Below are positions 3,809-60,920 of a DNA stretch of 64,000 nt, piece by piece. The notes under the pieces are model-generated. The model made no database searches. It was given only the letters and a program-made list of their open reading frames with translations, and was not told where the DNA came from. The stretch is taken from positions 1-64,000 of IMG/VR virus record IMGVR_UViG_3300035670_000008. The stretch is one strand, 5' to 3'. The position numbers and the translations under genes are program-made. Position 1 is the first letter of the stretch. Each line of letters opens with the position of its first letter.

Positions 3809-4013
3809 TATTGTCGATGGTCTTGAAGAAGATGTAGACAGCGCCGCTGGGCATAGTAACGTACATTAAGTCTTCCTGCACGGCGGCAACTCGTCCTTCT
3901 GACCTGACAGTGCTGCTACCGCAGCCACGCCAGCCGTTAGAAGTGAGTTCCGCGCCGATGTAGTCTACCTCTACGGTGACTTTTTGGTGGAGTAGTTTAG
4001 CTTTGGCTTCCAT
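3744..4013 (-). CDS. hypothetical protein
   Basis: packed ORF. Confidence 0.5.
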   Translation of the reverse strand: MEAKAKLLHQKVTVEVDYIGAELTSNGWRGCGSSTVRSEGRVAAVQEDLMYVTMPSGAVYIFFKTIDNNGNEVWANNDIGDGAQVVFHG

Positions 4014-4821
4014 ATTGGTCTGGGGTAGTAGCGACAGGGGCAGTAATGGTTTCTTCGCCGTATAGCAGCACAGCTAGCGAGTAGAGCTTATCGATAACGC
4101 CGACCTCTTCAGCATAAGACAAGGCTGACTTACGTTGGTTCTTAGCCCGGGTGACTAGGTCAACGTGGTGGCGGTAGCGGTATTCCCGGTACAAGTCTCC
4201 CCACAGTTTTTGGTAGGACTCCCCGGTACGATACGCGTAGCTACGCAGCAGTTCGTTAAGGCTGGAGCGGATGGACTTTTCGGGTACCTCTTCCATAGCA
4301 GCAGGCAGCGCTAGGATTTCCTTATCCACCCGGTCGAAGCGGCCTTCAATCACCTTCAGGCGGGTGTCTTGTTCTAGCAACGCGCGGGCCTGTTCTTGTT
4401 GACGTTGCTCCACGGCGATGATGGCTTCGGCTTGTAGTCTTAACAGCTCGCCGGGGCTTAGAGGTTGTTGGGTGTAGCTTCCGGTCTTACGAATTGCGGG
4501 TAGTACTTCCGAAGTGACCCAGCGTTTAAATGCTTTGGCTTGCGGCTTGTGGCTGCCTAAAACAGCAGAGTAAAGACCGGACTCATTGATGATAGAGAGC
4601 CTGAAAGTATTGCTGCCAAAGGTTTGTCCCAAAATGGGAGAATCCATTCCGTTGGGGTTAATAGTTTGTTTGTCCTCTTCGTCAACATGCTCTAGCAGTT
4701 TTGCAGGGTTTGAATATTCTAGTACAGCGGCTACTTCTTTAGCCACGAACCAAGGTGTGTCGTCAATAGTGATGACGCTAATGGTTTGGGTGTTGAAATC
4801 GAAAGTATTCAGGTTGCTCAT
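3997..4821 (-). CDS. Bro-N domain (antirepressor-like) DNA-binding protein, Bro-1
   Basis: PWFVAKEVAAVLEY...INESGLYSAVLGSHKPQAKAFKRWVTSEVLPAIRKTGSY. Confidence 0.92.
   Translation of the reverse strand: MSNLNTFDFNTQTISVITIDDTPWFVAKEVAAVLEYSNPAKLLEHVDEEDKQTINPNGMDSPILGQTFGSNTFRLSIINESGLYSAVLGSHKPQAKAFKRWVTSEVLPAIRKTGSYTQQPLSPGELLRLQAEAIIAVEQRQQEQARALLEQDTRLKVIEGRFDRVDKEILALPAAMEEVPEKSIRSSLNELLRSYAYRTGESYQKLWGDLYREYRYRHHVDLVTRAKNQRKSALSYAEEVGVIDKLYSLAVLLYGEETITAPVATTPDQYGSQS
4620..4646. repeat. in-frame quasi-palindrome in Bro-1 (encodes DSPILGQT)
   Basis: aggtttgtccc-aaaat-gggagaatcca, 8 of 11 arm positions pair. Confidence 0.6.
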
Positions 4822-4859
4822 AGTTAGGGTAAAATCCTTAGAAAATTAGGGTGAATAAA

Positions 4860-5054
4860 ATGGCAGACCTTTATGAAAAGACCTACCACGCTGCGTTGGA
4901 TTGGGCGAAGCGGCACTACCCCAACGCGAGTAAATACCACGTGGCTGCGTTTGGAGACTCCGTGGTCTACTTGGTGACCGGAGCCTCAACTTCTTTAGGG
5001 GGAGGGCCTTCGATAAGAGAAGTACTTTCTTTCTTATGGCAGGAGGTAGTTTAA
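4860..5054 (+). pseudogene. 5' half of a gene interrupted by the paralogue+HNH insertion
   Basis: MADLYEKTYHAALDW...GGGPSIRE aligns with the N-terminus of the 5058..5507 product. Confidence 0.75.
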
Positions 5055-5057
5055 GTT

Positions 5058-5507
5058 ATGGACATCATTAAGATGTATCACCGCGCTCATAAATGGGGAT
5101 TAAATCATCACAGCGCGGCTCATCCTCAACACCACCGCTCCTTTGCTGCAGCAGTAGCTCAGCTATGCTGTGACGACCCAAAGGAGCCACTGAACAAAAG
5201 GGAGACGCTACTCCTAGAACTTTTACAGATTAGCGGCGGTCCGACGTGCCGTGAAGGTGCAGCAATATGGGCAGCCTATGGTAAAGGCGACTCGGTTAAG
5301 TCTAAGCATGAAGGTATGACTATCTTTTATGTAGACCCTAAGGTTAAGCGTCCAGGTACCTGGACGTTCGACGAAGCAGTTGAGCATTGTGAGCCTTACT
5401 GCTACGGCGAGCTAACTAAGTTGCACCTCGAAGTTTCCAGAACTGACCCGTGCTTTGATGACCCGCCGGAAGATTTGTTATCCTTGAAGAAACTATTATC
5501 TTCTTAA
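5058..5507 (+). CDS. hypothetical protein, full-length paralogue of the interrupted gene
   Basis: N-half matches 4860..5021 and C-half matches 6142..6396. Confidence 0.8.
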   Translation: MDIIKMYHRAHKWGLNHHSAAHPQHHRSFAAAVAQLCCDDPKEPLNKRETLLLELLQISGGPTCREGAAIWAAYGKGDSVKSKHEGMTIFYVDPKVKRPGTWTFDEAVEHCEPYCYGELTKLHLEVSRTDPCFDDPPEDLLSLKKLLSS

Positions 5508-5509
5508 GG

Positions 5510-6136
5510 ATGTCTAGAAAAGACTTAACGGGACAAAGGTTTGGGCAACTTATAGCGCTGGAGCCCGCAGAAAAACTTAAAGGAAAAAGCACTTGGCTTT
5601 GTCAGTGTGACTGTGGTGAGATGACTATCGTCCAGACTAAGCGTTTAACTACTGGACATACAAAGTCGTGTGGTTGTCTTCAAAGAACCATAACTTTGAA
5701 GCATGGCTTAGCTAGGTCGAAGACCTACCAGGCATGGCGCAATATGAAGTGTCGTTGTTTGTTGAAAACCAGAAAAAGGTGGAAGGACTACGGAGGTCGG
5801 GGAATAACTGTAGACCCAAGTTGGATGGACTTTGAAAACTTCTTAAGAGACATGGGCGAAGCTCCTCCAGGTATGTCCCTTGAGCGTGTCGATAACGATG
5901 GCAACTACTGTAAAGAGAATTGTATATGGGCAAGCTGGGAAGACCAGTATCGTAATCGTAGGACGAGTATTCTTATAACTTTGGAAGGGGAAACCAAAAC
6001 TATATCGGAGTGGTGTAGGCACTACGGCATCAACAGAAGCGTTTACGTGTCTCGAACTAAAAGAGGGTGGAGCATAGAAGCTGCTTTGACTACTCCGGTG
6101 GATAGTCGTTTTCATCCGAAGAAATATTGTGGCTAG
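5510..6136 (+). CDS. HNH-family homing endonuclease
   Basis: DLTGQRFG..WLCQCDCG..KSCGC..YGGRGI..SLERVDNDGNYCKENC.W. Confidence 0.9.
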   Translation: MSRKDLTGQRFGQLIALEPAEKLKGKSTWLCQCDCGEMTIVQTKRLTTGHTKSCGCLQRTITLKHGLARSKTYQAWRNMKCRCLLKTRKRWKDYGGRGITVDPSWMDFENFLRDMGEAPPGMSLERVDNDGNYCKENCIWASWEDQYRNRRTSILITLEGETKTISEWCRHYGINRSVYVSRTKRGWSIEAALTTPVDSRFHPKKYCG

Positions 6137-8319: not shown

Positions 8320-8679
8320 TTAAAAGTCTTGTAAAGGTTCTTCTTCTGCTTGCTCTTTGCTTTTTTCTGTCGCTTCGCCGCAAAGGAAGTCTAATACTCC
8401 GTCTGAGAAGCCCACTTTAGTTAGCTGGAAGTATTGTTCTAAGAGCCTCCTCATAGAGGCTTTATCCTTTTCTTCTAACGGGTCAGTTAGAACATTAATG
8501 ATTTCTTCTGAGCCTACCTGCGCTACGGCAGCTTCAATCTCTTCTTTGCTATGGCCTAAGGCTTTGATAAGACACATCAGCTGGGCGCTCAGCACCATAT
8601 TCAGCAGCGCATCTTCGTAATAAGCAGTCTCCACCTGTTTCTGGCGGTGGCTAGCAGCGGTTAGGGTTTGTTTCTTCAC
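8320..8679 (-). CDS. hypothetical protein
   Basis: packed ORF. Confidence 0.55.
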   Translation of the reverse strand: MKKQTLTAASHRQKQVETAYYEDALLNMVLSAQLMCLIKALGHSKEEIEAAVAQVGSEEIINVLTDPLEEKDKASMRRLLEQYFQLTKVGFSDGVLDFLCGEATEKSKEQAEEEPLQDF

Positions 8680-9817: not shown

Positions 9818-10268
9818 GTTCGTGTTCCTCCAGTTTCTGTAGTAGGTCTTTTACGTTACCTAAGGCTGCCCAAATCTCTTCGTCGCTGTACTTTAGGTGT
9901 ATAACAATTTGAAGGTCACCGTCATCATAGACCTTTAGTGCGGAGCTGCCAATTCGGTACTCTGGCTCGAAGTTCGTTAAAGGCGGGAGTTGATCTTCTT
10001 TCTCTTTGTAGTCTGCATCTTCATCTATGGCCAGTAGCTCCCAACTGACTCCGTATAAGTCTTCGGCCTTGAAGTACTGGACTTCTTTTAAGAACTTGCT
10101 GACTCTTAAGGCTTTTTCTAATGTTGCCCTGGGTAAGTCACACTCAATGTAATCGGGGGTAGAACCCCACTCGATGTTGCTGTAGGTGACGGCTGTAACG
10201 ACGACAGTGTTAATTTTGAATTTGTAGAATTGTTCCATAACTTTACATTTCAACAATTGAAGCGTCAC
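9804..10268 (-). CDS. hypothetical protein
   Basis: packed ORF. Confidence 0.55.
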   Translation of the reverse strand: MTLQLLKCKVMEQFYKFKINTVVVTAVTYSNIEWGSTPDYIECDLPRATLEKALRVSKFLKEVQYFKAEDLYGVSWELLAIDEDADYKEKEDQLPPLTNFEPEYRIGSSALKVYDDGDLQIVIHLKYSDEEIWAALGNVKDLLQKLEEHEHGND

Positions 10269-10977
10269 TGTAGATAATCAAGGCGATGGCATAGAGCTTG
10301 TCAATCACCCCAACCTCTTCAGCGTATTCGCAGACGGTCTTGCCTTGGTTCTTGGCGCGGGCTACCAAATCAACGTGGTGCCGGTAGCGGTACTCTTTAT
10401 ACAGATTTCGCCATAGGTTTTGATAAGACTCGCCGGTGCGGTAAGCGTAGCCACGGATAACTTCGTTTAAGCAGGAGCGAATGGATTTTTCAGGAACTTC
10501 TTCCGTAGCCGGGGGTAACTGTTTGAGTTCTTCATCGACCTTGGCAAAGCGCTGCTCGATGATGGCTAACTTCATGCTGTGTTCGGTCAACCGCTTTTCG
10601 TGGTCTACCAATACCTGTGCTGACTGAAGCACTACTTCTGCTGTTGACAGTGGTTGAATTTGGTAGCTTCCAGTTTTACGGATGGAAGGCAGCACCTCTT
10701 GTACTACCCAGTCTTGAAAAGGCCCAGCTTGGGGTTTGCGTGAAGTAAGGACAAGTCGGTAAAGCCCAGACTCTGAAATGTAGACGGTGTCAGGGTTATC
10801 GACACCCTCGGTATTACCGATGGTCTTTTCGTAATCTTTTAGGCGGCTGTAGGCGTCACTATAATTCTTGATTTCCAGTACACGACAAACGTCTGCTCCT
10901 AGAAACCAAGGCTCGCCGTCAATAGTGATAACGCGTACTTCTTGGGTGTTGAATTGGAAAGTTGTTAGATTTGTCAT
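10243..10977 (-). CDS. Bro-N domain protein Bro-2, paralogue of Bro-1
   Basis: GEPWFLGADVCRVLEI..ISESGLYRLVLTSRKPQA..FQDWV..EVLPSIRKTGSY; C-terminal domain closely matches Bro-1. Confidence 0.92.
   Translation of the reverse strand: MTNLTTFQFNTQEVRVITIDGEPWFLGADVCRVLEIKNYSDAYSRLKDYEKTIGNTEGVDNPDTVYISESGLYRLVLTSRKPQAGPFQDWVVQEVLPSIRKTGSYQIQPLSTAEVVLQSAQVLVDHEKRLTEHSMKLAIIEQRFAKVDEELKQLPPATEEVPEKSIRSCLNEVIRGYAYRTGESYQNLWRNLYKEYRYRHHVDLVARAKNQGKTVCEYAEEVGVIDKLYAIALIIYSDASIVEM
10801..10827. repeat. in-frame 27-bp quasi-palindrome in Bro-2 (encodes KTIGNTEGV)
   Basis: gacaccctcgg-tatta-ccgatggtctt. Confidence 0.8.
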
Positions 10978-11005
10978 AGGATTCCTTAGAAAGGTTTAAT
11001 GGTTC

Positions 11006-11611
11006 TTACGCATAAATTTTTTCAATCAATTGGTTGATTACAGCGCCAATACAGAAACCTTTTTCTTGGGGCTCATACCGAATCCAAGAGCAGCCAAGAA
11101 TACTCGTAATACAATCCTGACGCTCAATGTCTTTTTTGGTTCGATAGCTATGATACGGCTCATCGCACTCAACGGCGATACGGTGCTGAGGGAAGTAAAG
11201 GTCAATTCGATAGCCTGAAACGAAAAACTGTTCAATTGGGTTTAAGTGTTGAAAAGCAGACTTAATAATTCGGAGTGTGTCGGCTTCAATAGAAGAACGA
11301 TGTATGTTTAGGTTTATACCTAGCTGCTCTGCTACCAAACGAGCCTTTGGTTTTCGTGACTTTTGTAGTAATTGTTTTACGCCCGGTTCCCAAATCACAG
11401 TTATAAGTTGGGGTCCACCAAGGGTCTCCACTAACTGGAGACCCTTCCACTCTTCATCAATACTTCGTGCTAGCCGCGATCCATCGCTCTCTGCTTCTAG
11501 TACAGTGGCTAAGTCAGTAGCTACCACACCAAAATCAAATGTGCCCTCTGGGTGTTTAACGAATCGAACTTCTTGTTGGTCAAAGTGTTGAGCGATTAAT
11601 TCAATTGTCAT
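11006..11611 (-). CDS. Bro-N-like domain fused to a DUF559/Vsr-like PD-(D/E)XK endonuclease, Bro-3
   Basis: VVATDLATVL..KGLQLVETLGGPQ..VIWEPG..SRKPKA, then YRIDLYFPQHRIAVECDE..H..D.ER..WIRY. Confidence 0.85.
   Translation of the reverse strand: MTIELIAQHFDQQEVRFVKHPEGTFDFGVVATDLATVLEAESDGSRLARSIDEEWKGLQLVETLGGPQLITVIWEPGVKQLLQKSRKPKARLVAEQLGINLNIHRSSIEADTLRIIKSAFQHLNPIEQFFVSGYRIDLYFPQHRIAVECDEPYHSYRTKKDIERQDCITSILGCSWIRYEPQEKGFCIGAVINQLIEKIYA
11420..11446. repeat. in-frame 27-bp palindrome with perfect 11-bp arms in Bro-3 (encodes KGLQLVETL)
   Basis: aagggtctcca-ctaac-tggagaccctt. Confidence 0.95.
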
Positions 11612-11650
11612 TGAATACCTCCGAAAGGTTTAATGGTTTTCTTCTCTTCA

Positions 11651-11677
11651 AAGGGTGTCCACATTATGGACGTCCTT
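11651..11677. promoter_or_regulatory. intergenic 27-bp quasi-palindrome, putative operator of the Bro-3/Bro-2 unit
   Basis: aagggtgtcca-catta-tggacgtcctt; 19/27 identical to 11420..11446. Confidence 0.65.
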
Positions 11678-11686
11678 AGCTAGTTT

Positions 11687-11706
11687 GCTTTCTTTTTGCT
11701 TTTTTC
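11687..11706 (-). promoter_or_regulatory. conserved 20-bp upstream motif GAAAAAAGC-N5-GAAAGC
   Basis: identical to 32738..32757; one mismatch to 34898..34917. Confidence 0.6.
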
Positions 11707-11720
11707 AGTCGCTTCAATAG

Positions 11721-11748
11721 AAAAAGCTGCCCACCGAAGCGGGCAGCT
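11721..11748 (-). terminator. intrinsic terminator
   Basis: AGCTGCCCGC-TTCG-GTGGGCAGCT followed by a T-run on the minus strand. Confidence 0.8.
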
Positions 11749-11801
11749 ACCATACATACACAATTACCCACCGATATGAGGCCTCGGACGCGGGCCAGCG
11801 A

Positions 11802-12407
11802 TTAGGCTAAGTGCAGCTTGCGAGTCAACCACTTATACGCGGCGAATAGTCGGTAGCCAACTCGGAACTTCGCCGTTTCAGCTTCTATAAGCATGGTTGT
11901 AGCTAACTTCTGCTTGAAGATATCTGTGTACCGATAGACCTTGATGGGGTCTTTGCCACTGTCGTGGGCTGTGGCAGCTTCAGCAAAGGTATCAAACTTC
12001 TGCCGGTGCGTAGCTACACCGTAGATTAACTCCAGCGCGTTGTAGATTCCATAGTCAACTGCGAAGTGTGGTTTTTCACCAGGCCAGTTGAGCCCTTCGT
12101 AGCCCCGCTGCCACAACGGACGGACGCCCAGCTTCTTATTGGTCAACGAAGCCAGCACCCAGTCGAGCAGCACGATATTGGTGTCGGGCCAGTAGTAGCA
12201 GGTGCCTCCGTAGACTTCTGAGTACCACCAGAACCACCGCCCGATCCATAGTTTCTGTAACCACTGTGGCATCCCACCTACGATGTCGGGGTCGTAGATT
12301 AGGGGGCTGACGCTGGCATAAAGGTCGTCTTCAATCTTAACGATGTAGCCTGGGTACTCTGGTTCAATCTTCCCGCAGCACACGACGATTTCTGCTTTAG
12401 TTTCCAT
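11802..12407 (-). CDS. hypothetical protein
   Basis: packed ORF. Confidence 0.6.
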   Translation of the reverse strand: METKAEIVVCCGKIEPEYPGYIVKIEDDLYASVSPLIYDPDIVGGMPQWLQKLWIGRWFWWYSEVYGGTCYYWPDTNIVLLDWVLASLTNKKLGVRPLWQRGYEGLNWPGEKPHFAVDYGIYNALELIYGVATHRQKFDTFAEAATAHDSGKDPIKVYRYTDIFKQKLATTMLIEAETAKFRVGYRLFAAYKWLTRKLHLA

Positions 12408-15219: not shown

Positions 15220-15247
15220 AAAAAAAAGCGGTGGTTAAGACCGCTTT
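15220..15247 (-). terminator. intrinsic terminator
   Basis: GCGGT-8nt-ACCGC followed by T8 on the minus strand. Confidence 0.7.
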
Positions 15248-15264
15248 ATACTAACGTTCGATAA

Positions 15265-15398
15265 ATGGGTGTAAGCATTACTTACATCCTTATTCTTCTT
15301 CTTCTCGGGTGCTTAGAGTTAACTTAAAGGGAACGTATATTACCCGTACCCTAGTTAAAGCTTTCTTACCTATGGGGACAAGCATTGTTTGTCCCCAT
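15265..15398. repeat. array of three 27-bp quasi-palindromes of the Bro-N in-frame type
   Basis: 15265 atgggtgtaag-catta-cttacatcctt; 15327 aagggaacgta-tatta-cccgtacccta; 15372 atggggacaag-cattg-tttgtccccat. Confidence 0.75.
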
Positions 15399-15419: not shown

Positions 15420-15629
15420 TCATTGTTCTGCTGCGTCTTCTATTGTCTCAGTGTCGTAGAATTCCAAGCTGAAGTGTCCAGCATCGACGATGCTCTTCAC
15501 TAGGCTTTTGGCTTCTTTCAGCAATGCGTCTAGTTCTTCTTCAGTTTCCGCGGCGTTGTCGCTATGCACGGGGAAGTTAAGACTAAAGTAGTGCACATAC
15601 TTTGGTACGTAGTTAGGTGCGTTTTTCAT
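15420..15629 (-). CDS. hypothetical protein
   Basis: packed ORF. Confidence 0.55.
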   Translation of the reverse strand: MKNAPNYVPKYVHYFSLNFPVHSDNAAETEEELDALLKEAKSLVKSIVDAGHFSLEFYDTETIEDAAEQ

Positions 15630-16301: not shown

Positions 16302-16465
16302 AGATAAGCGTTTAGGCTAAACTCATCTGGCTTTCCCTCTGCTTTTTTCTCTGCCTTCGTGTCTACAGCAGTGATATTAGGGTCAGTTGTTTCGTCAATA
16401 GCTTTTACGTAGGCAGCCTTTAGAGCGGAGTAGTTCCAGCTGTATTTTGATTGGTTTGGTAGCAT
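16286..16465 (-). CDS. small hypothetical protein (59 aa)
   Basis: MLPNQSKYSWNYSALKAAY... fills a gap; below ORF-track cutoff. Confidence 0.45.
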   Translation of the reverse strand: MLPNQSKYSWNYSALKAAYVKAIDETTDPNITAVDTKAEKKAEGKPDEFSLNAYLWLGE

Positions 16466-32737: not shown

Positions 32738-32757
32738 GCTTTCTTTTTGCTTTTTTC
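32738..32757 (-). promoter_or_regulatory. conserved 20-bp upstream motif
   Basis: GAAAAAAGCAAAAAGAAAGC, 25 nt before ATG 32712. Confidence 0.65.
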
Positions 32758-34897: not shown

Positions 34898-34917
34898 GCT
34901 TTCTTTTCGCTTTTTTC
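34898..34917 (-). promoter_or_regulatory. conserved 20-bp upstream motif
   Basis: GAAAAAAGCGAAAAGAAAGC, 19 nt before ATG 34878. Confidence 0.65.
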
Positions 34918-57542: not shown

Positions 57543-57567
57543 TTTGTTTAATAGGGTTTTGAGCTTT

Positions 57568-57996
57568 CTATCGGCTCTTTTCTTCGTCTTCTAGTTCTCT
57601 GCTGAGTTTTTCTATTAAATTCTGGAGCCGGCAGCTGTCATCCCCCGGGACTCTAGGGAGTGGCAGCTCGGTATTAGGCCATAGGTAGATATCCCCGCAG
57701 ATGCAATGCAGCTCCGTTAAGCCGGCTATCTTAACAGCGGAGGGCATTCGACAGTTAGCACAATGCTTAATCTCCCATTCCTCAGCTTCCAATTCCCCAA
57801 TGGAGCAGTCAGTCAGCGATAGATACACAAACCACCGCTGTTCCCAGATAGACTCCCAGAACTGGTTAAACTCGGTAGAATAACCGTTTAACCCTCGGAC
57901 GGCAGGTGTGTCTAATAACTTACCACCGGACTCCAGACGCTTACCGGCCTGTAGCCACAACCCAACGTAGTGTTTTAACTCTTGTTTGGTAGCCAT
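57568..57996 (-). CDS. conserved cyanobacterial hypothetical protein (host-like)
   Basis: MAT..ELK.Y...W.Q.GK...YS.EF..W...YL..TD..I.EL...WE...CA.C.MP...WPNTELP.PR.P. Confidence 0.75.
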   Translation of the reverse strand: MATKQELKHYVGLWLQAGKRLESGGKLLDTPAVRGLNGYSTEFNQFWESIWEQRWFVYLSLTDCSIGELEAEEWEIKHCANCRMPSAVKIAGLTELHCICGDIYLWPNTELPLPRVPGDDSCRLQNLIEKLSRELEDEEKSR

Positions 57997-60587: not shown

Positions 60588-60920
60588 ATGGTTTCTTTTT
60601 TCTCTTTTCTTTTAGGTATAGGGGTTTCACTTTTAGTACTAGGTCTTACTGAAGCAGTTATTAAACCACTTGCGACAAAGACGACTAAATACTATATCAA
60701 GGCTTATGTGCCTAAATTATTAGACTATTTAGATGAGTTCTTGCCGGTATGGTTTGGTAACCTGTCGGAGGAAGAAATTAGACAAGAACTTATCCGATTC
60801 CTTTGGACAGAGGCTACAGAACAAGGCGAGCGTATTGAAGAAACTCAAGTAGAGGAGATAATCAACACTGCAGAATCAACTTACTCTTTCTTTAAGAACG
60901 CGTCTAAACTATTAAGCTAA
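60588..60920 (+). CDS. membrane-anchored hypothetical protein
   Basis: N-terminal transmembrane helix; TAATG-coupled to the next gene. Confidence 0.6.
   Translation: MVSFFSFLLGIGVSLLVLGLTEAVIKPLATKTTKYYIKAYVPKLLDYLDEFLPVWFGNLSEEEIRQELIRFLWTEATEQGERIEETQVEEIINTAESTYSFFKNASKLLS

What the first reader, a model, noticed from the sequence alone, without database searches (positions are those of the whole stretch)
11611..11706. Bro-3 promoter region holds a near-copy of its own coding palindrome in operator position
Order on the minus strand: terminator, 20-bp motif (11706-11687), 9 nt, palindrome 11677-11651, leader, ATG 11611. The palindrome is 19/27 identical to the in-gene copy 231 bp away. 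The layout suggests autoregulation through paired sites, possibly with DNA looping (inference).
Basis: partly seen in the sequence, partly recalled or inferred. Interest (0 to 1): 0.6.

Follow-up and report, generated by a model that had tools for sequence, protein, structure and literature searches.

The report
Recurrent Bro-N hairpin in nuclease-gene leader
The palindrome ahead of this phage's Bro-nuclease gene is real, but it is one copy of a small stem-loop found inside Bro genes of many phages and loose between genes, so it looks more like an RNA-level control element or a recombination leftover than a pair of DNA operators.

Summary
The order on the minus strand is terminator, 20-bp A-rich motif, 9 nt, 27-nt imperfect palindrome (11677-11651), 39-nt leader, ATG 11611. 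The palindrome is 19/27 identical to a perfect palindrome 231 bp inside the gene. The paired-operator and DNA-looping reading is poorly supported.

- The palindrome lies on a 47-nt indel. The only close relative (L008) lacks it, although it keeps the same terminator, motif, leader and Bro-N 5' end.
- Nine homologous genes have no upstream near-copy.
- The element belongs to a 27-nt stem-loop family, AAGGAYGT-NNN-YAATG-NNN-ACACCCTT. The ends and loop are conserved and the inner stem covaries.
- The family sits at the same codons of Bro-N genes in diverse phages. One such copy is 25/27 identical to the upstream element.
- It also occurs free between genes: a second copy in this window at 15265-15291, and copies in two unrelated phages with no Bro gene nearby.

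Bro-3 is a Bro-N domain fused to a Vsr-like nuclease. It looks like a homing endonuclease gene.

My best reading is a leader stem-loop that masks an AAGGA Shine-Dalgarno-like sequence and an AUG. That AUG opens an 18-codon frame ending in ATGA on the Bro-3 start. Function is inferred, not shown.

The parts
11725..11748 (-). Intrinsic terminator of the upstream gene (stem AGCTGCCCGC / GTGGGCAGCT, then a T-run). Conserved in L008 through G.U-compatible changes.
11687..11706 (-). 20-bp A-rich motif. It is one of 21 co-oriented copies in the genome (extended consensus GAA-N6-GAAAAAAGCAAAnnGAAAGC). It is a candidate phage promoter or upstream control motif; this is inferred, not shown.
11635..11681 (-). 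47-nt segment present here and absent from the relative L008. It is bounded by AAACTA / AAACCA microhomology. It raises the motif-to-ATG distance from 28 to 75 nt.
   Evidence: (alignment A1)
11651..11677 (-). RNA fold -11.3 kcal/mol, z -3.4.
11608..11664 (-). 18-codon frame MWTPFEEKKTIKPFGGIQ. Its ATG lies in the stem-loop's loop, AAGGA sits 8 nt upstream, and its TGA overlaps the Bro-3 ATG (ATGA). Hypothetical leader ORF.
11623..11638 (-). Leader block AACCATTAAACCTTTC, repeated exactly ahead of Bro-2 (10989-11004) and shared from ATTAAACC onward with L008.
11618..11622 (-). Bro-3 Shine-Dalgarno GGAGG, predicted to pair with ACCUU of the leader. The start codon lies in a 7-bp palindrome ATTCAAT-GACA-ATTGAAT (11598-11615).
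11006..11611 (-). Bro-3: Bro-N domain (residues 1-91) fused to a Vsr-like / PvuRts1I-N / DUF559 nuclease domain.
11420..11446 (-). In-gene stem-loop copy at codons 56-64 (KGLQLVETL): perfect 11-bp arms, -20.2 kcal/mol. It is far more stable than synonymous recodings (z -6).
10243..10977 (-). Bro-2. It has a different Bro-N allele and a C-terminal half about 97% identical to L008's single Bro protein. It carries a weaker palindrome at the homologous codons (10783-10809).
15265..15291 (-). Stem-loop copy 3 (free, intergenic): AAGGATGTAAGTAATGCTTACACCCAT. It matches copy 1 at the ends and loop, and its three inner pairs are all changed compensatorily.
15220..15246 (-). Intrinsic terminator after copy 3. 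The 10-codon frame that starts in copy 3's loop stops (15248-15246) at its base.

Best explanation
What it is (high confidence). The 27-mer is a copy of a discrete stem-loop module, AAGGAYGT-NNN-YAATG-NNN-ACACCCTT.
- The module normally lies inside Bro-N coding sequences, at the codons K-D/G-V/L-x-N-V-x-T-L.
- It also occurs as free copies between genes.
- Here it sits on a lineage-specific 47-nt indel in the 5' leader of Bro-3, a Bro-N + Vsr-like nuclease gene of homing-endonuclease type.
- Its likeness to Bro-3's own coding palindrome is common descent within this family. It is not a purpose-built second operator.

How it most likely works (inferred, moderate confidence). It acts as a folded strand in the mRNA leader.
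- The stem pairs an SD-like AAGGA with an anti-SD-like ACACCCUU and holds an AUG in the loop.
- That AUG opens an 18-codon frame. The frame runs through the two small hairpins that hold Bro-3's own GGAGG and AUG, and it ends in AUGA on the Bro-3 start.
- Opening or closing the stem-loop would therefore set how many ribosomes reach the nuclease start (translational coupling).
- If transcripts instead start inside the element, the remaining stem would be a 5'-terminal stabilising hairpin.
For: - Family membership. A matrix from alleles of other loci ranks the element first genome-wide. It is 25/27 identical to the in-gene allele of L030, 20/27 to L008 with the central TAATG 5/5, and 19/27 to L020.
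- Strict 18-base IMG/VR scan. Four of five hits have all three unconstrained inner pairs complementary, and three of those lie at the homologous Bro-N codons. This counts as about three independent hits of four, because L029 and L033 are the same allele. Chance per hit is about 0.05.
- Covariation on 11 copies. 86% of cells pair against 74% in shuffles (0/500). The score is 0.33 against 0.10, and against 0.05-0.13 when the partners are slid.
- In-gene copies fold better than synonymous recodings, and the site ranks 1-4 of about 95 windows in five of ten genes.
- Inner stems show G.T wobbles and no A.C.
- Free copies exist at 15265-15291, in L032 and in L136. The last two have no Bro-N gene within 8-12 kb.
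- The 47-nt indel is shown.
- Leader ORF geometry.
- Leader fold: -20.4 kcal/mol, z -2.1, with SD and AUG in small hairpins.
- Other nuclease homologues also carry leader hairpins. L003 and L007 show a compensatory change, and L013 sequesters its AAGGA.
- Hairpin control of translation is the documented norm for phage homing endonuclease genes (PMC2988022).
Against: - There are no expression data. If transcription starts just after the A-rich motif, the AAGGA may not be in the RNA.
- The leader ORF is not conserved as a peptide beyond M-x-T-P. Short frames with such stop positions are not rare by chance.
- The relative L008 expresses a near-identical Bro-N from the same leader without the element, so it is not essential.
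- Covariation between the two free copies may have arisen while their ancestors were coding alleles. It does not prove selection in the intergenic state.
- Part of alignment A5 was picked for hairpin-forming hits, which inflates. The unbiased evidence is.
- G.T against A.C counts are too few to fix the strand.
Confidence: 0.4

Rival explanations
1. Protein-bound operator, in the manner of I-TevI (a refined form of the reader's idea). Bro-3, or another Bro-N protein, binds the palindrome as a dimer. The in-gene copy is its recognition or homing site in Bro-N genes. The upstream copy overlaps the start of transcription and gives autorepression of a potentially harmful nuclease. The two sites, 231 bp apart (22.0 helical turns), might loop. 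A variant has the protein bind the RNA hairpins.
For: - Bro-N is a DNA-binding domain, and the nuclease fold matches AbaSI, PvuRts1I, Vsr and the homing endonuclease I-Bth0305I.
- The family behaves like a mobile nuclease cassette. N-terminal Bro-N domains vary, while the nuclease is conserved and joined at SRKPxA.
- The cassette is present here and absent at the same locus in L008.
- It lies directly upstream of another Bro gene in three of seven independent gene contexts.
- In L015 a 44-nt direct repeat bounding the cassette starts exactly at the hairpin's right arm.
- The element lies 9 nt after the A-rich motif, over a TAGCTA -10-like hexamer.
- I-TevI represses its own late promoter through a 15/20 copy of its homing site (PMC2988022).
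- Bro-N/KilA-N nuclease fusions and a domesticated repressor, CapR, are known in ICP1/PLE (PMC8096241).
Against: - No upstream near-copy exists in nine homologues.
- The element is absent from L008.
- Copy 3 is not at a promoter motif and precedes an unrelated gene.
- Free copies occur in phages with no Bro gene nearby.
- Inner-stem positions vary freely as long as they pair, which a sequence-reading dimer would not need.
- The half-site is not enriched elsewhere in the genome.
- The gene's own perfect site would be a self-target.
Confidence: 0.2
2. Recombination scar without function. The 47-nt segment is debris from the shuffling of Bro modules: gene conversion, template switching at a hairpin, or repair after nuclease cutting. 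It is tolerated in a leader.
For: - It is lineage-specific, bounded by 6-nt microhomology AAACTA / AAACCA.
- The region is mosaic. Bro-3 + Bro-2 here correspond to one chimeric gene in L008, and the Bro locus is 88-95% identical while the flanks are 55-70%.
- Both free copies lie within 4 kb of the Bro genes in a 216-kb genome, and no others exist.
- In L015 a rearrangement joint lies at the hairpin.
- The stem has two mismatches.
Against: - In both free copies homology stops exactly at the base of the stem, and no Bro-N remnant is detectable around copy 3.
- The same discrete 27-mer stands alone in two unrelated phages, one of them AT-rich.
- Ends and loop are conserved across hosts.
Confidence: 0.28
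3. Chance resemblance between two unrelated palindromes.
For: 19/27 matches occur about 0.5 times per genome in shuffles, and one unrelated 19/27 hit exists.
Against: - The local test gives 0/300.
- The element ranks first genome-wide for a matrix built from foreign alleles.
- It is 25/27 identical to L030.
- The covariance model gives E = 3e-8, with the caveat that this copy was in the training set.
Confidence: 0.03

Closest known systems
I-TevI (phage T4 td intron endonuclease): operator that copies the homing site
   Same: Both have a nuclease gene preceded by a near-copy of a site that also lies in a coding sequence. For I-TevI the match is 15/20 and here it is 19/27. Both copies are placed over the proximal promoter region, and both proteins are modular: a DNA-binding domain plus a nuclease (PMC2988022).
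   Different: - The nuclease here is Vsr-like, not GIY-YIG.
- The site lies in the gene's own Bro-N part.
- No binding, cleavage or promoter has been shown.
- The copy is not conserved in homologues.
- A further copy lies away from any promoter.
RNA hairpins that limit translation of phage homing endonuclease genes (I-TevI/II/III, segB, mobE, seg43(25))
   Same: Both are stable stem-loops in the leader of a free-standing nuclease gene. An SD-like sequence sits in the stem, and one T4-family case has a hairpin just upstream of the RBS rather than over it (PMC2988022).
   Different: Here the masked SD and AUG belong to a short upstream frame, not to the nuclease itself. The hairpin is also a member of a sequence family that occurs inside coding regions.
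EDxHD / Vsr-like homing endonucleases (I-Bth0305I) and PvuRts1I/AbaSI nuclease domains
   Same: The fold and motif of the Bro-3 C-terminal half match: D137...E148-x-D150-E151...H154. Pfam PvuRts1I-like_N and DUF559 score above their cut-offs, and Foldseek finds 4par, 4oq2, 3r3p and 1cw0 (PMC3384342).
   Different: The nuclease is fused to Bro-N, not to the I-Bth0305I binding region. It is free-standing, with no intron or intein. The Foldseek E-values are weak (0.003-0.04).
Bro-N/KilA-N nuclease fusions of ICP1 and the PLE repressor CapR
   Same: Both join a Bro-N-type DNA-binding module to a nuclease in phage homing-type genes, and a relative in that system is used as a transcriptional repressor (PMC8096241).
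   Different: Those nucleases are T5orf172/GIY-YIG. No shared sequence with them was found here.
REP-like or other dispersed structured palindromes
   Same: Both are short imperfect palindromes with conserved ends, a conserved mismatch and a covarying stem, found at several intergenic places.
   Different: There are only three copies per genome. Most members are embedded in frame in one protein domain. No RAYT/TnpA partner was seen. This comparison rests on my own knowledge and was not tested.

Membership tests
Autoregulatory operator pair (I-TevI-type or looping repressor) | A near-copy of the protein's other binding site overlaps the gene's own promoter. | tested here: inconclusive
   The near-copy is real. 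It lies 9 nt after a 21-copy upstream motif, but no consensus sigma-70 promoter is found there and no transcription start could be mapped.
Autoregulatory operator pair (I-TevI-type or looping repressor) | The arrangement is kept in relatives that carry the gene. | tested here: not met
   L008 lacks the 47-nt segment. Nine homologous genes have no upstream near-copy of their coding segment.
Autoregulatory operator pair (I-TevI-type or looping repressor) | The protein binds both sites and represses transcription. | not testable with these tools
   This needs EMSA and reporter assays.
Structured cis-acting RNA/ssDNA stem-loop | Base pairs are kept through compensatory changes across copies. | tested here: met
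   Pairs 9-19, 10-18, 11-17 and 7-21 change on both sides. The covariation score is 0.33 against 0.10 in shuffles (0/500) and at most 0.13 when slid. The unbiased check is. In-gene folding exceeds synonymous recodings.
Structured cis-acting RNA/ssDNA stem-loop | The element is transcribed and is on the sense strand. | not testable with these tools
   All copies are co-oriented with the genes, and the covariance model scores the sense strand higher. No reads were available.
Any described RNA family (Rfam 15) | A match to a curated covariance model. | tested here: not met
   No match up to E = 1 in 10800-12000, both strands.
Intrinsic terminator | A GC-rich stem followed by a T-run. | tested here: not met
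   The palindrome is followed by TTTGAAGAG and is not listed by the scan. The true terminator is at 11748-11725.
Vsr-like (EDxHD/PvuRts1I-N/DUF559) nuclease, for Bro-3 | Catalytic acidic and histidine residues, and the fold. | tested here: met
   Pfam scores are above cut-off. D137, E148, D150, E151 and H154 are invariant or nearly so in 14 sequences. The motif aligns to AbaSI. The AF2 model has pLDDT 86.8, with Foldseek hits 4par, 4oq2, 3r3p and 1cw0.
Free-standing homing endonuclease gene, for Bro-3 | Patchy presence at one locus among related genomes, with flanking conversion. | tested here: inconclusive
   It is present here and absent in L008 at the same locus, with high local identity. 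L015 shows an insertion bounded by a 44-nt repeat. Only one close genome pair is available.
Free-standing homing endonuclease gene, for Bro-3 | Site-specific cleavage of the nuclease-less allele. | not testable with these tools
   This needs a biochemical assay.

The most novel reading that the evidence does not exclude
The 27-nt module AAGGAYGT-NNN-YAATG-NNN-ACACCCTT is an undescribed, functionally selected phage element. It lives both inside the Bro-N reading frame and free between genes. It would be read by one factor, either the ribosome (a self-masked start site used as a translational coupling or anti-termination switch) or Bro-N proteins and their fused Vsr-like nucleases (a recognition or homing site with operator copies). 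In the second case the Bro-3 leader copy would be a new instance of the I-TevI logic in a new endonuclease family.
Probability: 0.25. Interest if true: 0.7.

Novelty: new variant of a known kind. Interest (0 to 1): 0.5.

Why it matters
Bro-N (antirepressor-type) genes are among the commonest and least understood phage genes, and they are notoriously mosaic.

- A conserved nucleic-acid stem-loop written into the same nine codons of the domain, and reused outside genes, would point to one of two things. It could be a shared control device, or it could be the site at which Bro modules and their attached nucleases recombine.
- The Bro-N + Vsr-like nuclease family seen here behaves like a homing cassette that lands in or beside Bro genes. 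That would add a family to the known phage homing endonucleases and give a concrete candidate target site.
- For the finding as stated, the practical lesson is that a near-copy of a coding palindrome in 'operator position' can be explained by descent from a recurrent module. It should not be read as an operator without comparative or experimental support.

Tried and rejected
- Close relatives were sought in IMG/VR with Bro-3, with the upstream ORF and with a leader pattern. None was found.
- The JGI metagenome scan returned only the L008 contig again.
- Known phages showed only a 75% match of Bro-2 to Microcystis phages. Nothing matched the intergenic region.
- Rfam and tRNA scans were empty.
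- Public sequencing runs could not be used to map a transcript start or indel polymorphism.
No conclusion is drawn from this.
- The L008 contig could not be extended to look for a copy-3 homologue, because the record is not held.
- The other five contigs carrying identical Bro-3 were not shown, being collapsed as similar places.
- Half-site enrichment: AAGGGTSTCCA is not enriched elsewhere in the genome.
- Homology of the window leader to the L003/L007 leaders was not supported by alignment.
- G.U against A.C counts across all 11 pairs of the broad Bro-N set are confounded by Lys and Pro codons, so they are uninformative.
- One IMG/VR scan used a pattern mis-spaced by one base. It returned 36 ordinary RBS-ATG gene starts and no hairpin. 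It is useful only as a reminder that AAGGAGGT-N-ATG is a generic start site.
- The idea that flanking TGAAGAG shows a permuted duplication was dropped as not significant.
- The covariance model found no further copies in the genome beyond the three.

Full report
**Setting.** The window is the first 64 kb of a 216,563-bp IMG/VR virus record (49% GC, CheckV 96% complete). Its genes run almost entirely on the minus strand. The nearest named phages are Microcystis phages, and only through a 75% match in Bro-2.
- Residues 1-91 form a Bro-N domain.
- The rest is a Vsr-like nuclease. Pfam PvuRts1I-like_N, DUF559 and Bro-N all score above their cut-offs.
- The catalytic stretch aligns to AbaSI.
- An AlphaFold model (pLDDT 86.8) retrieves AbaSI, PvuRts1I, the catalytic domain of the homing endonuclease I-Bth0305I, and Vsr. 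The E-values are weak (0.003-0.04) but probabilities are 0.98-1.00.
- Bro-2 (10243-10977) follows 28 nt downstream. A third Bro gene lies at 3997-4821.

**Observation.**
- The upstream 27-mer pairs at 9 of 11 arm positions. The in-gene 27-mer (11446-11420) pairs at 11 of 11. Identity is 19/27 and the offset is 231 bp.
- Genome-wide, 19/27 is unremarkable. Shuffled genomes give 0.47 hits, and one unrelated hit exists.
- Locally, no shuffle of the 300 nt upstream reaches 19 (0/300).
- A weight matrix made only from alleles of other loci ranks the upstream element first in the genome.
- The resemblance is therefore real.

**The comparative test.** One close relative exists, a 104-kb contig (L008).
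- It is syntenic but has a single Bro gene. That gene's first 91 residues are 84% identical to Bro-3, and its C-terminal half is about 97% identical to Bro-2.
- Its upstream region keeps the GGCCCGCG box, the terminator (with G.U-compatible changes), the A-rich motif (18/20), the leader ATTAAACCTTTCGGAG and the start.
- It lacks 47 nt, window 11635-11681, and these contain the whole palindrome.
- The gap is bounded by AAACTA / AAACCA, so the direction (deletion or insertion) cannot be told.
- With the segment, the motif-to-ATG distance is 75 nt. Without it the distance is 28 nt, as at the other copies of the motif (16-42 nt).
- The Bro locus is 88-95% identical between the two phages while flanking genes are 55-70%. 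The indel is therefore a discrete recent event in an exchanged module.

**The in-gene palindrome is not incidental.** At the codons homologous to K56-L64, other Bro-N genes carry palindromes of different sequence.
- Against synonymous recodings that keep the protein and the gene's codon usage, the native 39-mers fold better:
  - Bro-3, z -6.0
  - L008, z -5.4
  - L003, z -2.9
  - Bro-2, z -2.8
  - L018, z -2.3
  - L015, z -1.7
- L007a, L007b, L013 and L019 do not fold significantly better.
- In sliding windows the homologous site ranks 1-4 of about 95 in five of ten genes. It ranks first of 270 in L020.
- Combining the eight genes other than Bro-3 and L008 by Fisher's method, computed by hand, gives p of about 0.003.
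- A fixed 11-pair structure shows more pairing and covariation than shuffled or slid controls.
- In the model these codons form one beta-strand.

**A family with free copies.** The foreign-allele matrix also exposed a third copy at 15265-15291(-), AAGGATGTAAGTAATGCTTACACCCAT.
- It lies between the ORF at 15420-15629 and a terminator (15246-15220), ahead of an unrelated 245-residue ORF.
- Copies 1 and 3 agree at AAGGA.GT...TAATG...ACACCC. At the three inner pairs they differ on both sides, CCA/TGG against AAG/CTT.
- An IMG/VR scan with those 18 fixed bases gave five hits:
  - three at the homologous codons of Bro-N genes (L030, KDVRNVDTLGG, 25/27 identical to the upstream element; L029 and L033, KDVYNVYTLGG, with L033 23/27 to copy 3);
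  - one free-standing (L032);
  - one ordinary RBS-ATG (L031).
- All four family hits have the three unconstrained pairs complementary. Chance is about 0.05 each.
- A looser scan added L072 (in-gene, KDVHNVHTPGG) and L136 (free, in an AT-rich intergenic stretch).
- L032 and L136 have no Bro-N gene within 8-12 kb.
- On 11 copies, 86% of cells pair against 74% in shuffles. The covariation score is 0.33 against 0.10 (0/500) and at most 0.13 when slid. Part of that set was chosen for pairing, so searches are the unbiased evidence.
- A covariance model finds only the three copies in this genome. It also finds, untrained, the homologous site of L018.
- Rfam has nothing.

**What the gene is.** Full-length homologues (36-68% identity) share a well conserved nuclease half joined at SRKPxA to very different Bro-N halves.
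- Seven independent gene contexts were seen: the window, L003, L007, L013, L015-17, L018 and L019. In three of them (the window, L007, L015-17) the nuclease gene lies directly upstream of another Bro gene.
- In L015 the cassette is bounded by a 44-nt direct repeat that begins exactly at the right arm of the in-gene hairpin. The downstream Bro gene lacks its first 55 or so codons.
- This is the behaviour of a homing-type cassette. Cleavage and mobility are inferred, not shown.

**Mechanism.** The stem pairs AAGGA(Y)GU with ACACCCUU and leaves YAAUG in the loop. In effect an SD-like sequence is paired with an anti-SD-like sequence, with a start codon 8 nt after the SD.
- In the Bro-3 leader that AUG (11664) opens 18 codons that end in ATGA on the Bro-3 start.
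- The frame crosses a 5-bp hairpin holding Bro-3's GGAGG and a 7-bp hairpin holding its AUG.
- At copy 3 the loop AUG opens 10 codons that stop at the base of the terminator. In L032, 17 codons stop one base before a 10-bp hairpin.
- I therefore favour a translational device that gates ribosome flow, or a 5'-terminal stabilising stem if transcription starts inside it.
- This is inference. The peptides are not conserved and such frames can arise by chance.

**Rivals.** The I-TevI precedent is an operator that copies the homing site (PMC2988022). Bro-N nuclease relatives used as repressors are also known (PMC8096241). These keep a protein-bound operator alive at about 0.2. A neutral recombination scar stands at about 0.28.
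- Against the operator: no conservation in L008 or in nine homologues; a free copy away from any promoter motif; free copies in Bro-less neighbourhoods; and inner positions that vary as long as they pair.

**Limits.** No transcript data were available and no complex prediction could be run. Only one close genome is available, and the promoter role of the A-rich motif is unproven.

Noticed in passing
genome-wide; in the window at 8348-8367, 11687-11706, 16330-16349, 32738-32757, 34898-34917, 57563-57582, 60590-60609 (all minus strand): An A-rich motif, GAA-N6-GAAAAAAGCAAAnnGAAAGC, gives 21 matrix hits. All are on the coding strand and none on the other. Almost all lie 16-42 nt before a start codon, and the motif is conserved in L008 against diverged flanks. 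It is a candidate phage-specific promoter or upstream element.
   Followed up: partly
window 11781-11796 (-); genome 213165-213180 (-); L008 3866-3881: The box GGCCCGCGTCCGAGGC followed by ATATCGG is repeated near the two ends of the record and in the relative. A similar hairpin plus ATATCGG precedes the Bro gene of L020. The whole intergenic cassette is conserved while the upstream genes differ, which suggests a portable regulatory linker.
   Followed up: partly
window 10243-11611 (-) against L008 4001-4753: Two genes here (Bro-N(A)-nuclease, then Bro-N(B)-C-terminal domain) correspond to one chimeric gene in the relative (Bro-N(A)-C-terminal domain). The left break lies after EPGV and the right near QIQPLS. 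The Bro locus is much more similar between the two phages than its flanks.
   Followed up: yes
L015 374-460 and 830-880 (also L016, L017): A nuclease cassette lies inside a Bro gene, bounded by a 44-nt direct repeat (43/44 identical). The repeat starts exactly at the right arm of the in-gene hairpin. The downstream gene starts at the repeated ATG-GCA-ACA-CCC and keeps only the last part of Bro-N.
   Followed up: partly
L003 776-802; L007 148-174: The two closest full-length nuclease homologues share a leader hairpin 37 nt before the start, with a compensatory stem change (CCTCTG/CAGAGG against CCTCCCTG/CAGGGAGG). L013 has 9-bp arms that sequester its AAGGA. None resembles its own coding segment.
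   Followed up: partly
window 15362-15388 (-): A second hairpin, ATGGGGACAA-ACAATGC-TTGTCCCCAT (10-bp arms), lies 70 nt upstream of copy 3. Its centre matches the family (AAACAATG.TT). The ATG in its loop opens 31 codons whose TAA overlaps the first bases of copy 3. It may be a diverged fourth member. The covariance model did not report it.
   Followed up: partly
window 11598-11615 (-): The Bro-3 start codon lies in a perfect 7-bp palindrome, ATTCAAT-GACA-ATTGAAT. The GGAGG can pair with ACCTT of the conserved leader.
   Followed up: no
window 11420-11446 and 11651-11677: The centre-to-centre spacing of 231 bp equals 22.0 turns at 10.5 bp per turn. The in-gene copy holds two inverted GGTCTC sites, and the upstream copy holds a GACGTC site. 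These are noted only as curiosities.
   Followed up: no
genome about 104-113 kb (outside the window): There is an open frame of about 4,239 codons on the minus strand. Two motif-like hits lie within or just ahead of it.
   Followed up: no
window 4851-6136 (+): A short block of plus-strand ORFs sits just upstream of Bro-1 in an otherwise minus-strand genome. The Bro-1 and Bro-2 leaders share TTTCTAAGGA.
   Followed up: no
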